A DNA stretch of 63,673 nt, counting the filler, from Reticulomyxa filosa (taxonomy: Eukaryota; Protista; Foraminifera): assembly GCA_000512085.1 (NCBI GenBank). It is 14 parts of 14 records of this genome, joined end to end, with 100 filler letters (N's around TTAATTAATTAA, not from the genome) between each part and the next. Parts side by side here need not be neighbours in the genome. Positions count along the whole stretch, not along the records: positions 39,036 to 40,992 come from ASPP01011526.1; 13 more parts are not named here. One strand, 5' to 3'. The translations under genes were made by a program, and so were the position numbers. The first letter of the stretch is position 1, and every line of letters starts with the position of its first letter. This document shows positions 39,036-41,113 of this stretch, piece after piece. The notes below the pieces were generated by a model, which made no database searches, was not told the DNA's origin, and saw only the letters and a list, made by a program, of their open reading frames with translations.

Positions 39036-39448
39036 AAAAAAAAAAAAACACTTTCAAAACTTCAAACGTTGCATAACCTCGATACGTAATCTTAAAGGGA
39101 GACTTTCTAGTGATCACCGCCTTCTCTTTGTTCGGGTTCTCCTTATTAAATGTCGGGTCCAAAAAGTATGTCACCTTACGCACTGTCACCGGCGGCACCA
39201 CGCGGTCCGGCTCCAAGCTTATGAATGCACTCCATGTGTGCGGTGTTTTTGTATCTTTTGCTGCTCGCAACTCCGAGTGGGTGTTGCCAATGTACAAGTG
39301 CTCATAAATACCTTCTATGTATTGTCAATGTGGGTTTCCCCCCCCCCTCCCTTCTCTTCCAACAGAATCTCGGATGCACACATAATCGACACAAAAGAGA
39401 GCAGAGAAAGATGCCTGAGGAAGGGTCAGTAGTAGCTGCTGATGACAT
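39036..39448 (-). CDS. YEATS-domain protein, 5' part
   Basis: YIGNT..HTWSAFI..VRKVTYFLDPTF..KSPFKITYRGYATFEV follows the YEATS consensus. Start inferred at 39448. Confidence 0.8.
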
Positions 39449-39733
39449 GAAAAGATTTTGTGAAAGAAAGAACGTGAAATAATCAATTATACGACGGCAG
39501 TTGCTTTTTTTTCCCCCTCCTCGCCGTCCCTGGCACAGCAAAAAACGTGGGTTTTTCTTTTAAACGCACAAAAATCTTCCAGAAGAAGAGAGTTAATCGT
39601 TATCTGTAAGTTCATAAGTGACTGTGGAGCGGATGTAATATTTTCACCTTTGTGAGTCGTGACAACGAAAGTTCCGTGGGTACAAAAAAAAGAAAAATTT
39701 AAAAAACGCTTAAAACGTGACTTGTCCATAAAA

Positions 39734-40945
39734 ATGGGTAACGAAGAATCAACTGACAATCATGACTATGTCTCCGGTGGAGAAAGTGGTGACAACGCAC
39801 CTGGCACACCAACGTCAGGAACGTCAGCGGACAAAATGATTGCGTTTGGCCCCCGAGTTGGTTCTGTTCATGCATTTTGGAGGGACAGCGTGTCCAACCT
39901 GGAACAGTCACAGCTTAAAGTAACCAAAGAGATAACATATACAAACGAAAAAGAAAAAAAAAGGACCAAAAACAAAACATTAATGAAAACGTTTAGGTTC
40001 TCGGGTTGCTGCTATTTTCTGGATTATTCAAAAAATCAAAAGAAGTACGGGATCTCTATACAAGCACGGATATTCAACGTCAAAGTTTACGGTTATTAGA
40101 CATGGTAAGTTGGTCTTTTTTTAATTTTCTCCCTCTCCCCCCCCCCCTTTTTTTTTAATTAAGGGGACAGGAAAAAAAAAAGTACATTTTACTGACCCAG
40201 CAAACAAAATCTCTTTTTTAAAAAAAAAAAAAAAAGTTTGAATGGCTATTGAACACTTTGAATTCCAGTGGAAACAGTTTATGCTTGAAAACGTTACACA
40301 ATTTGGGAGAGAGACATATTGCATATGGAGTAAAGCCAGAGTTCTTTAGGCCTATGTACGAAGCTTTGAGTGATGCCTTGGGTGAAGTTAAATAATTTTT
40401 TTTTTTTTTTTTTTTAAAAAATCAAAAGTATCTTTTTTTCCTCAAGGTTTGAAAATTAGCTATAAAAAAAAAAAGTGATGCCAGGTACATACATATATAT
40501 ACGTGTACATGTATATATATGTATGTGGTGTGAGGGTGTATAAATTGTTTTGTTGTGTGTGTGTTAGATGTTTCCTGGGGATTATACCGAGGAAATCCAA
40601 CAAACGTTGGAAGAATTGTTCCAAAAGGCAAGCGAAGAAATGATGGTGAAAGTGATGAAAAAGCAGGCAAAGTTACAACGCAAGATAGCAATGAAGAGCA
40701 AAACAAAGGGAAGCCCGAGCGTGCATATACCGAGATACTTGGCATCATTGGACCATTGTTTGGCCGACCCAGTTGGATTTCATCACTTGGCAATCTTCAC
40801 GAATGAAAAGTATCCCACTGCTGTCCCGTACTTGGAGTTTCATCGCGCTTTCCAAATCTACCGTTCCACGCTCAATCATAAAATTCGAAAGGAGGTTGCA
40901 CATGAAATCTGCTTGGTCTTTTTGAAGTCAGGCTCAAAGTTATTA
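39734..40945 (+). CDS. Globin-RGS fusion protein with an N-myristoylation motif; exons 39734-39919, 39997-40104, 40237-40386 and 40568-about 40945; 3' end cut by the contig edge
   Basis: Three phase-0 GT-AG introns join MGNEES..VHAFW..|VLGLLLFSGLFKKSKEVRDLY..QRQSLRLLDM|FEWLLNTL..LKTLHNLGERHIAYGVKPEFF..EALSDALGE|MFPGDYTEEIQQTLEELFQKASEEM (globin helices A-H). This is followed by SLDHCLADPVGFHHLAIF..YLEFHRAFQIYR..RKEVAHEICLVFLKSGS (RGS-like). Confidence 0.82.
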
Positions 40946-41113
40946 CGTTTTATAAATTATTTTTTTTTTATGCTCAAAAAAAAAAAAAAAAANNNNNNNN
41001 NNNNNNNNNNNNNNNNNNNNNNNNNNNNNNNNNNNNTTAATTAATTAANNNNNNNNNNNNNNNNNNNNNNNNNNNNNNNNNNNNNNNNNNNNCCCCCCCT
41101 TTCTATCAAAGTG

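What the first reader, a model, noticed from the sequence alone, without database searches (positions are those of the whole stretch)
39734..40945. Globin fused to an RGS-like domain, with an N-myristoylation motif: candidate haem/O2-gated G-protein regulator
Seen: three phase-0 GT-AG introns (39920-39996, 40105-40236, 40387-40567) assemble a full globin that the ORF track misses. It runs in frame, within exon 4, through a basic helical linker into an RGS-like domain, so the fusion is not an artefact of contig joining. The N-terminus MGNEES fits the MGxxxS myristoylation consensus. Aligned by eye to Vitreoscilla/flavohaemoglobin-type globins, the proximal His F8 is present (LGERHIAYGVKPEFF), E7 is Gln, B10 is Phe and CD1 is Tyr. 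Known: globin-coupled sensors drive chemotaxis, cyclase and kinase outputs in bacteria, and RGS domains bind or inactivate G-alpha. I know of no characterised globin-RGS. Inference: a membrane-tethered O2/NO/redox sensor feeding G-protein signalling without a receptor, plausible for a sediment protist living in oxygen gradients. Caveats: the canonical RGS E-x-S-x-EN motif is replaced (NEKYPTAVPY), so it may bind G-alpha without GAP activity, and the C-terminus is missing.
Basis: partly seen in the sequence, partly recalled or inferred. Interest (0 to 1): 0.88.

Follow-up and report, generated by a model that had tools for sequence, protein, structure and literature searches.

The report
Foraminiferal globin fused to RGS domain
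This is a real gene of the foraminifer Reticulomyxa filosa for a haem-globin joined to a G-protein-regulator (RGS) domain with a lipid-anchor start; all sampled foraminifera share it, and it is a testable candidate for coupling oxygen or nitric-oxide sensing to G-protein signalling.

Summary
The piece is Reticulomyxa filosa contig ASPP01011526.1. A fourth, phase-2 intron starts at 40939. The missing 3' end (exon 5 and stop) lies on the overlapping contig ASPP01022564.1, annotated only as a partial hypothetical protein.

The exons tile, without gap or overlap, onto full-length proteins from Elphidium, Ammonia, Nonionella, Bolivina and Globobulimina, and from environmental contigs. One of these is an uninterrupted ORF on a Tara metagenome scaffold. 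A second foraminiferal genome has all four introns at the same positions.

Orthologues pass Pfam's curated cut-offs for both Globin and RGS. Family profiles hit HGbI/HGbRL globins (E about 1e-14) and RGS10 (E about 5e-7). The haem pocket is conserved: His F8, Gln E7, Phe B10 and Phe/Tyr CD1. An N-terminal Met-Gly-Asn is kept in 10 of 12 members.

The RGS Gα-contact motif 'SEEN' is not conserved, so GAP activity is doubtful. Function is untested. No paper describing a globin-RGS was found. I read it as a new output variant of haem-sensor and sensor-RGS fusions, specific to Foraminifera.

The parts
39734..39919 (+). Exon 1. Holds the start codon, the N-terminal Met-Gly-Asn-Glu-Glu-Ser myristoylation-type motif (39734-39751), a low-complexity acidic/Gly/Ser/Thr spacer, and the globin A helix (from about 39836).
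   Evidence: Translation. First ATG after the in-frame stop at 39653, and a match to the PROSITE-type pattern. Aligns to the A-helix region of orthologues.
39920..39996 (+). Intron 1: 77 nt, phase 0, GTAACC...TTTAG.
   Evidence: Same position and phase in the second foraminiferal genome, L002.
39997..40104 (+). Exon 2 (108 nt): globin helices B to E. Phe B10 is at 40015-40017, Tyr CD1 at 40057-40059, Gln E7 at 40081-40083, and Arg E10 and Leu E11 follow.
   Evidence: Translation. Profile alignment to HGbI 3s1i with its residue numbers (PMC4476040). The exon has the identical length in L002.
40105..40236 (+). Intron 2: 132 nt, phase 0, GTAAGT...AAAAG, with long C, T and A homopolymer runs.
   Evidence: Position conserved in L002.
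40237..40386 (+). Exon 3 (150 nt): globin helices E/F to G. The proximal His F8 is at 40315-40317, in the motif Gly-Glu-Arg-His.
   Evidence: Translation. Pfam Globin E=0.001 on this exon alone. Arg-His is invariant in the family. The exon has the identical length in L002.
40387..40567 (+). Intron 3: 181 nt, phase 0, GTTAAA...GTTAG. Contains a T20 run and TA/TG microsatellite-like sequence.
   Evidence: Position conserved in L002.
40568..40657 (+). Exon 4, first part: globin helix H.
   Evidence: Tiles the end of the orthologues' globin domain.
40658..40729 (+). Exon 4, middle: Lys/Arg-rich linker between the two domains. It is variable in length and composition among orthologues.
40730..40938 (+). 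Exon 4, last part: first half of the RGS domain (helices about 1 to 5). It carries a short insertion where canonical RGS proteins have Ser-Glu-Glu-Asn.
   Evidence: Pfam RGS E=0.0011, profile positions 1-63 of 117. Language-model neighbours are RGS clusters. Family profile against RGS10, RGS1 and RGS9.
40939..40992 (+). Start of intron 4 (phase 2, AA|GTTATT), cut by the contig end. The intron is 145 nt on the overlapping contig. Exon 5 is L001:292-592 and the stop is 593-595.
   Evidence: Same position and phase in L002.

Best explanation
Shown: this is a real five-exon gene of Reticulomyxa filosa. It is split over two overlapping contigs and encodes about 372 residues. In order, the protein has a Met-Gly-Asn start suited to N-myristoylation, a disordered spacer, a complete 3-on-3 haem globin of the flavohaemoglobin-like (F) lineage, a linker, a full RGS domain and a charged tail. 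It belongs to a protein family found in every foraminifer sampled here. Inferred: the globin binds haem through His F8 and acts as a gas or redox sensor. Its pocket has Gln E7 and Phe B10, not the Tyr B10 of its closest solved relatives HGbI and HGbRL. Ligand or oxidation-state changes in helices E to H would be passed through the helix H-linker connection to the RGS domain. That would change how the RGS domain binds a Galpha subunit at the membrane, where the lipid anchor places it. Because the usual Galpha-contact residues are replaced, the output is more likely binding or sequestration of a lineage-specific Galpha than textbook GTPase acceleration. My confidence in the architecture is about 0.95. 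The figure below is for the sensor-to-G-protein mechanism.
For: Gene model. The 3' end lies on ASPP01022564.1, with about 200 bp of near-identical overlap. The same architecture occurs in Elphidium and Ammonia (MMETSP transcripts), Nonionella, Bolivina, Globobulimina and environmental contigs, and as an intronless ORF on a Tara metagenome scaffold. All four intron positions are conserved in a second genome. Pfam Globin scores 36-38 bits (cut-off 22) and RGS 26-27.6 bits (cut-off 23.9) in P0013, P0015 and P0017. The family profile hits HGbRL at 2.6e-14, HGbI at 9e-14 and RGS10 at 4.4e-7. With the RGS-only profile, 33 of 34 PDB hits are RGS, axin or RGS-RhoGEF chains. The AF2 model of orthologue P0005 matches HGbI at Z 17, rmsd 2.1 A over 130 residues, and RGS1/16/18 at TM 0.66-0.70 by target. 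His F8, Gln E7 and Phe B10 are invariant. Met-Gly-Asn is kept in 10 of 12 N-termini although the next 30-90 residues are hypervariable, and a stop lies two codons upstream in L004/L005. Precedents come from the literature: ferric neuroglobin acts as a Galpha-i GDI (PMC4842972); HGbRL is a globin fused to a Roadblock/LC7 NTPase-regulator domain (PMC4476040); LOV-RGS photoreceptors exist (PMC8017926); and the myristoylated globins GbX and GLB-26 are known (PMC3176823, PMC3520999).
Against: Nothing functional was measured. The positions aligned to the canonical Ser-Glu-Glu-Asn motif (RGS4 Ser85-Asn88, by my own knowledge of Tesmer et al. 1997) read hydrophobic-x-Glu-Leu in the family and Val-Pro-Tyr in R. 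filosa. The alpha5-alpha6 region is about 8 residues longer and poorly modelled. Half of the orthologues have Asp or Glu at position 6, which disfavours N-myristoyltransferase. The globin is of the F lineage, whose known chimeras are enzymes, not of the sensor (S) lineage. No RNA run of R. filosa was listed, so expression in this species is not shown. I could not check whether foraminifera have Galpha subunits; only other rhizarians are documented (PMC3971589, PMC5784254).
Confidence: 0.5

Rival explanations
1. The globin is the working part: a membrane-anchored enzyme or O2 buffer, for example an NO dioxygenase, nitrite reductase or peroxidase. This would be useful in denitrifying or anoxia-tolerant foraminifera. 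The RGS-homology domain has lost GAP function and only targets or scaffolds the protein, as in GRKs, axin, AKAP10 or sorting nexins.
For: The canonical Galpha-contact motif is not conserved. Many RGS domains are known scaffolds without GAP activity (PMC3971589). The globin is closest to F-lineage globins such as HGbI, which has very high O2 affinity. Family members occur in Nonionella, Bolivina and Globobulimina, which I know as low-oxygen, nitrate-respiring foraminifera.
Against: Phe replaces the Tyr B10 that is highly conserved in the closest bacterial globins HGbI and HGbRL (PMC4476040) and that, to my knowledge, NO-dioxygenase-type flavohaemoglobins rely on. There is no reductase domain. 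The RGS domain is as well conserved across the family as the globin (9 invariant and 20 nearly invariant columns in 130), which argues for a specific partner rather than a decaying appendage.
Confidence: 0.3
2. Both halves act on Galpha. The RGS domain binds the active form, and the ferric globin binds the GDP form as a dissociation inhibitor, as reported for human neuroglobin. The protein would then be a redox-switched two-handed clamp on one G protein.
For: Ferric neuroglobin binds Galpha-i/o-GDP and acts as a GDI (PMC4842972). Neuroglobins are among the structural neighbours of the model's globin half.
Against: Neuroglobin is only a remote relative (profile E about 1). Its GDI activity depends on a few surface Glu residues that differ even between human and zebrafish (PMC4842972). 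Nothing here tests such a surface.
Confidence: 0.12
3. The fusion is an artefact: a wrong gene model, a chimeric contig, or a dead pseudogene in R. filosa.
For: The assembly is highly fragmented and rich in homopolymer errors. The overlapping contig differs by one A in a run at 40806-40809, which truncated GenBank's model RFI_26035. No RNA run was listed.
Against: The globin-to-RGS transition lies within one exon with no stop or frameshift. The same single ORF exists in transcripts of several species and on a metagenome scaffold. Intron positions are conserved in a second genome. All haem-pocket residues are intact.
Confidence: 0.03

Closest known systems
HGbRL and HGbI of Methylacidiphilum infernorum (PDB 3wfw, 3s1i; PMC4476040)
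   Same: They are the best sequence and structure matches of the globin half (E 2.6e-14 and 9e-14; Z 17). They have Gln E7, His F8, no D helix and a compact F-lineage 3-on-3 fold. HGbRL is also a two-domain protein whose C-terminal Roadblock/LC7 domain belongs to a superfamily that may function in NTPase regulation.
   Different: They are bacterial. They have Tyr B10 where this family has Phe, and Lys E10 (the haem's sixth ligand in HGbRL) where this family has Arg. The output domain is Roadblock/LC7, not RGS. They have no lipid-anchor motif.
Bacterial and archaeal globin-coupled sensors (HemAT, diguanylate cyclase, kinase types; review PMC7475203)
   Same: They have an N-terminal haem globin followed by a C-terminal signalling domain, and ligand binding is relayed to the output.
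   Different: Those globins belong to the sensor (S) lineage. Here the Protoglobin Pfam matches stay under threshold (13.6-17.8 bits against 25) and the best matches are F lineage. The review names methyl-accepting chemotaxis, kinase and diguanylate cyclase domains among the outputs, and RGS and G proteins occur nowhere in its text.
Canonical RGS proteins (RGS10, RGS1, RGS9, RGS4; PDB 2ihb, 2bv1, 1fqi, 1agr)
   Same: Sequence-profile membership holds (E 4.7e-7 to 0.08), as does Pfam RGS above threshold in orthologues. The hydrophobic core motifs are conserved, including the Phe-Asp of helix 7 and the terminal aromatic-x-x-Phe.
   Different: The Ser-Glu-Glu-Asn Galpha-contact motif is replaced. 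The alpha5-alpha6 region is longer. GAP activity is therefore uncertain.
Sensor-RGS fusions: helmchrome (LOV-RGS) of stramenopiles and haptophytes, and RGS-LOV BcLOV4 of Botrytis (PMC8017926)
   Same: A small-molecule or cofactor-based sensor domain is fused to an RGS domain in a protist or fungus, and acts at or near the membrane.
   Different: The sensor is a flavin LOV domain responding to blue light, not a haem globin. The domain order and number differ.
Neuroglobin as a Galpha-i/o GDI (PMC4842972); myristoylated globins GbX and C. elegans GLB-26 (PMC3176823, PMC3520999)
   Same: They are precedents for a globin that talks to heterotrimeric G proteins in a redox-dependent way, and for N-terminally acylated, membrane-bound globins with proposed sensing roles.
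   Different: They are single-domain animal globins with no RGS domain. They are only remotely related in sequence (neuroglobin E about 1).

Membership tests
Globin (Pfam PF00042, 3-on-3 fold, F lineage) | Profile score above Pfam's gathering cut-off (22 bits) | tested here: met
   Orthologues score 28-38 bits. The window's exon 3 alone scores 20.0 bits, E=0.001. The joined R. filosa protein was not scored, because joining exons was left out by rule.
Globin (Pfam PF00042, 3-on-3 fold, F lineage) | Proximal His F8 and a hydrophobic CD1 aromatic residue | tested here: met
   His is at 40315-40317 and aligns to the proximal His of HGbI and HGbRL. CD1 is Tyr in R. filosa and Phe in the orthologues.
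Globin (Pfam PF00042, 3-on-3 fold, F lineage) | 3-on-3 helical sandwich | tested here: met
   In the AF2 model of orthologue P0005 the globin part has pLDDT 70-92. It matches HGbI at Z 17.0, rmsd 2.1 A over 130 residues, with TM 0.81 by target.
Globin (Pfam PF00042, 3-on-3 fold, F lineage) | Tyr B10 together with Gln E7, typical of flavohaemoglobin-type globins | tested here: not met
   Gln E7 is present, but B10 is Phe in every member.
Globin (Pfam PF00042, 3-on-3 fold, F lineage) | Binds haem | not testable with these tools
   This needs recombinant protein and UV-visible spectra.
RGS domain (Pfam PF00615) | Profile score above Pfam's gathering cut-off (23.9 bits) | tested here: met
   P0005 scores 24.6, P0007 27.5, P0013 26.4, P0015 27.6 and P0017 26.5 bits over profile positions 1-108. 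P0003 (22.7) and P0018 (23.2) fall just under. The window's exon 4 holds only half the domain and scores 19.8 bits.
RGS domain (Pfam PF00615) | Nine-helix RGS fold | tested here: inconclusive
   The full-length model matches RGS1, RGS16 and RGS18 at TM 0.66-0.70 by target, but with Foldseek E 0.05-0.07. The isolated-domain model was poor (pLDDT 54.8) and gave no significant match.
RGS domain (Pfam PF00615) | Conserved Galpha-contact residues (Ser-Glu-Glu-Asn of helices 3-4; Asn of the alpha5-alpha6 loop) | tested here: not met
   The positions aligned to SEEN of RGS1 and RGS10 read hydrophobic-x-Glu-Leu in the family and Val-Pro-Tyr in R. filosa. The alpha5-alpha6 Asn could not be assigned.
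RGS domain (Pfam PF00615) | Binds Galpha and accelerates its GTPase | not testable with these tools
This needs biochemical assays.
Globin-coupled sensors (S-lineage GCS) | N-terminal globin followed by a C-terminal signalling domain | tested here: met
   The order is globin, then linker, then RGS, in all members.
Globin-coupled sensors (S-lineage GCS) | Globin of the sensor/protoglobin lineage | tested here: not met
   The Protoglobin Pfam matches are under threshold. The best solved relatives are F-lineage HGbI and HGbRL.
N-myristoylated proteins | Gly at position 2 and the pattern G-{EDRKHPFYW}-x(2)-[STAGCN]-{P} | tested here: met
   The window sequence fits the pattern. Gly2-Asn3 is kept in 10 of 12 N-termini. 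The full pattern holds for the window and 4 orthologues; 5 others have Asp or Glu at position 6.
N-myristoylated proteins | Actual lipid attachment and membrane association | not testable with these tools
   This needs N-myristoyltransferase co-expression or labelling with a myristate analogue.

The most novel reading that the evidence does not exclude
This family would be the first eukaryotic haem-based sensor whose output is an RGS domain. It would be a lipid-anchored, receptor-independent switch through which O2, NO or cellular redox state sets the activity of heterotrimeric G proteins. It would then be a molecular basis for how foraminifera steer their pseudopodial networks and migrate along oxygen and nitrate gradients in sediments.
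Probability: 0.35. Interest if true: 0.85.

Novelty: new variant of a known kind. Interest (0 to 1): 0.72.

Why it matters
Foraminifera are major players in benthic carbon and nitrogen cycling, and many live at or below the oxic-anoxic boundary. How they sense oxygen or nitric oxide is unknown. This is a conserved, lineage-wide protein that wires a haem pocket directly to a G-protein regulator, and it has a membrane-anchor motif. That gives a concrete and easily expressed candidate: several orthologues are intronless ORFs of about 350 residues. For globin biology it adds a new output domain to haem-sensor chimeras, built on an F-lineage globin rather than the sensor lineage. For G-protein biology it adds a haem counterpart to the LOV-RGS photoreceptors. 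It also gives an independent, genetically hard-wired link between a globin and Galpha signalling, which bears on the reported G-protein (GDI) role of neuroglobin. Practically, it shows that the R. filosa annotation misses the gene. Only half of the RGS domain is annotated, as a partial hypothetical protein on another contig.

Tried and rejected
Searches that gave nothing:
- RNA evidence in R. filosa: none was listed.
- phmmer of exon 4 alone against PDB sequences gave nothing meaningful. Only family profiles reached RGS structures.
- Two hits of the exon-4 search, P0008 and P0009, are low-complexity or TPR proteins and not relatives.
- ESM Atlas searches gave no two-domain counterpart. This shows neither absence nor novelty.

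Folds and complexes:
- The AF2 model of the RGS domain alone was poor (pLDDT 54.8). Its Foldseek matches were not significant (E 0.64 and above, TM about 0.25), although nearly all top rows were RGS chains.
- Complex prediction of the globin domain plus haem against the RGS domain of orthologue P0005 gave no verdict (score 0.25, mark 0.34). It is not evidence either way.

Literature:
- Searches for globin with RGS, Reticulomyxa or foraminifera, for chimeric globins, and in a 2020 globin review found no description of this architecture.
- The organism of assembly GCA_024449935.1 (L002) could not be identified.
- The R. filosa genome paper is not held.

Explanations rejected:
- A contig-joining artefact is ruled out because the fusion lies inside one exon.
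- Bacterial contamination is ruled out by the spliceosomal introns and by the relatives all being foraminiferal.
- A pseudogene is ruled out by the intact frame and intact key residues.

Left out by rule: the exons were never joined into one protein for any search or fold. Full-length orthologues served as proxies.
Full report
**What the piece is.** Places 39036-40992 are the whole of Reticulomyxa filosa contig ASPP01011526.1 (1957 bp, assembly GCA_000512085.1). The public gene calls on it hold only the exon-4 ORF, with no family assigned.

**Check of the observation.**
- The introns 39920-39996, 40105-40236 and 40387-40567 are GT...AG and phase 0.
- They are much poorer in G+C than the exons: 0.24-0.31 against 0.37-0.50.
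- ATG 39734 is the first ATG after an in-frame stop at 39653.
- One correction. Exon 4 ends at 40938, where a phase-2 donor (AA|GTTATT) begins a fourth intron that the contig end cuts.
- A search of 1.8 billion representative proteins with exon 4 returned P0002. This is GenBank ETO11338.1, 'hypothetical protein RFI_26035, partial'. It is identical to the last 44 residues of exon 4 and continues for about 100 more.
- P0002 lies at the start of contig ASPP01022564.1 (L001). That contig overlaps the end of this piece by about 200 bp with near identity. It supplies the rest of intron 4 (145 nt), exon 5 (L001:292-592) and the stop.
- The two copies differ by one A in the run at 40806-40809. That difference explains why GenBank's model starts only after that point.
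- The complete gene has five exons and encodes about 372 residues.
The exons were searched by reference, and full-length orthologues served as proxies.

**Independent support for the gene model and the fusion.**
- The same search and a profile search found a tight family of full-length proteins with the same order of parts.
- Members come from Elphidium margaritaceum and Ammonia sp. (MMETSP transcriptomes), Nonionella stella, Bolivina argentea and Globobulimina turgida (EukProt), and several environmental contigs.
- One member, P0015, is an uninterrupted 379-codon ORF on a Tara metagenome scaffold and also on a Logan contig.
- tblastn of these proteins against the window shows colinear matches to exons 1 to 4, and then to exon 5 on L001.
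- In a domain alignment the window's exon pieces tile the orthologues' globin domain end to end, with no gap or overlap at any junction. The RGS part is equally colinear.
- A contig of another assembly (L002, GCA_024449935.1, organism not given) carries the closest relative. All four of its introns are at the same positions and phases, and exons 2 and 3 have identical lengths of 108 and 150 nt.
- The fusion is therefore not a modelling or assembly artefact. It is also older than the split between these foraminiferal lineages.

**The globin half.**
- On the window alone, exon 3 gives Pfam Globin at E=0.001, just under threshold. Orthologues score 28-38 bits against a cut-off of 22.
- A profile of four members hits the solved globins HGbRL (3wfw, E=2.6e-14) and HGbI (3s1i, E=9e-14) of Methylacidiphilum. 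Plant non-symbiotic haemoglobins follow at about 5e-5, and neuroglobin at about 1.
- HGbI's chain numbering in that alignment, together with PMC4476040 (Tyr29 = B10, Gln50 = E7), fixes the pocket: Phe B10, Tyr CD1 (Phe in orthologues), Gln E7, Arg E10, Leu E11 and His F8. All of these are invariant in the family except CD1.
- The AF2 model of orthologue P0005 has pLDDT 70-92 in this part. It superposes on HGbI at Z 17.0, rmsd 2.1 A over 130 residues (TM 0.81 by target).
- This is an F-lineage (flavohaemoglobin-like) 3-on-3 globin, not a sensor-lineage one. The Protoglobin matches stay under threshold.

**The RGS half.**
- Exon 4 alone matches the first 63 of 117 positions of Pfam RGS at E=0.0011. 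Its language-model neighbours are RGS clusters (18 of 30).
- Five orthologues pass the curated cut-off over positions 1-108, with 24.6-27.6 bits against 23.9.
- The RGS-only family profile hits RGS10 (4.7e-7), RGS1 (1.8e-4), RGS9, RGS12, RGS14 and others. Of its 34 hits, 33 are RGS, axin or RGS-RhoGEF chains.
- Fold support is moderate. The full-length model matches RGS1, RGS16 and RGS18 at TM 0.66-0.70 by target, but with weak Foldseek E-values. The domain modelled alone was too poor to use.
- In the alignments to RGS1 and RGS10, the canonical Ser-Glu-Glu-Asn reads hydrophobic-x-Glu-Leu in the family. In R. filosa a short insertion gives Val-Pro-Tyr.
- By my own knowledge of the RGS4-Galpha-i1 complex (Tesmer et al. 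1997), these positions form part of the pocket for Galpha switch I. By-eye mapping suggests that further contact positions in helices 7-8 also differ. The alpha5-alpha6 region is about 8 residues longer, and its key Asn cannot be assigned.
- Membership of the RGS superfamily is therefore well supported.

**The N-terminus.**
- The window's start fits the PROSITE-type myristoylation pattern.
- Met-Gly-Asn begins 10 of 12 family N-termini, while the following 30-90 residues are hypervariable and low in complexity. In L004/L005 a stop lies two codons upstream, so this is the true start.
- Five orthologues have Asp or Glu at position 6, which is unfavourable for N-myristoyltransferase. Lipidation is therefore likely but not certain.

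**How it most likely works.**
- Shown: there is a conserved two-domain protein with an intact haem pocket, an RGS-superfamily domain and a conserved Gly2.
- Inferred: the globin binds haem, and its ligand or redox state is relayed to the RGS domain. That changes the RGS domain's binding to a Galpha at the membrane. I give this sensor-to-G-protein reading about 0.5.
- The main rival (0.3) is that the globin is the working enzyme or O2 buffer, and the RGS-homology domain only targets it.
- A neuroglobin-like two-handed action on Galpha gets about 0.1, and an artefact about 0.03.
- A test of globin-RGS domain contact gave no verdict and counts for nothing.

**Comparison with what is known.**
- The review of globin diversity (PMC7475203) never mentions RGS or G proteins. 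It names methyl-accepting chemotaxis, kinase and diguanylate cyclase domains among the outputs of globin-coupled sensors.
- The survey of eukaryotic GPCR signalling (PMC3971589) does not mention globin. [quoted passage not shown]
- Full-text searches found no globin-RGS.
- Public pipelines label family members 'hemoglobin-like flavoprotein', reading only the globin half.
- The nearest ideas are HGbRL, a globin fused to a Roadblock/LC7 domain (PMC4476040); LOV-RGS photoreceptors (PMC8017926); neuroglobin as a Galpha-i GDI (PMC4842972); and the myristoylated globins GbX and GLB-26.

**Verdict.** The functional interpretation is plausible but untested. Novelty: a new variant of known kinds (haem-sensor chimeras and sensor-RGS fusions), apparently undescribed. 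Interest: 0.72.

Noticed in passing
window 39049-39297, minus strand: This is the first part of a YEATS-domain gene (Pfam YEATS E=3.7e-8). It points away from the globin-RGS gene and runs off the contig's left end. The two starts are about 430 bp apart, so they may share a divergent promoter region.
   Followed up: partly
window 40792-40992 and L001:1-200 (ASPP01022564.1): Two R. filosa contigs overlap by about 200 bp but were left unjoined. They differ only in homopolymer lengths (A4 against A3 at 40806-40809, and the T and A runs near the end) and in a few bases of intron 4. The one-base difference truncates GenBank's model RFI_26035.
   Followed up: yes
window 40105-40236 and 40387-40567: The introns are full of long homopolymer runs (C12, T10-T20, A16) and a TA/TG microsatellite-like stretch. 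The contig itself begins and ends in A runs. The assembly probably broke at such runs.
   Followed up: no
L002:374-1761 (GCA_024449935.1, JAANSS010687028.1): This is a complete five-exon orthologue in another, very fragmented genome whose organism the tools did not name. It is the closest relative of the R. filosa gene. The collection's gene calls split it into three unrelated ORFs.
   Followed up: partly
L004:1-3657, minus strand (Tara scaffold): Next to the intronless globin-RGS ORF lies a gene of more than 1353 residues with only faint Kelch-repeat hits. It is also uninterrupted, which suggests an intron-poor foraminiferal or related genome.
   Followed up: no
L001:593 onward and P0002 residues about 100-143: The R. 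filosa protein alone carries a charged C-terminal tail of about 45 residues (Lys/Glu/Asp/Ser/Thr-rich) after the RGS domain. All other members end right after the last RGS helix.
   Followed up: no
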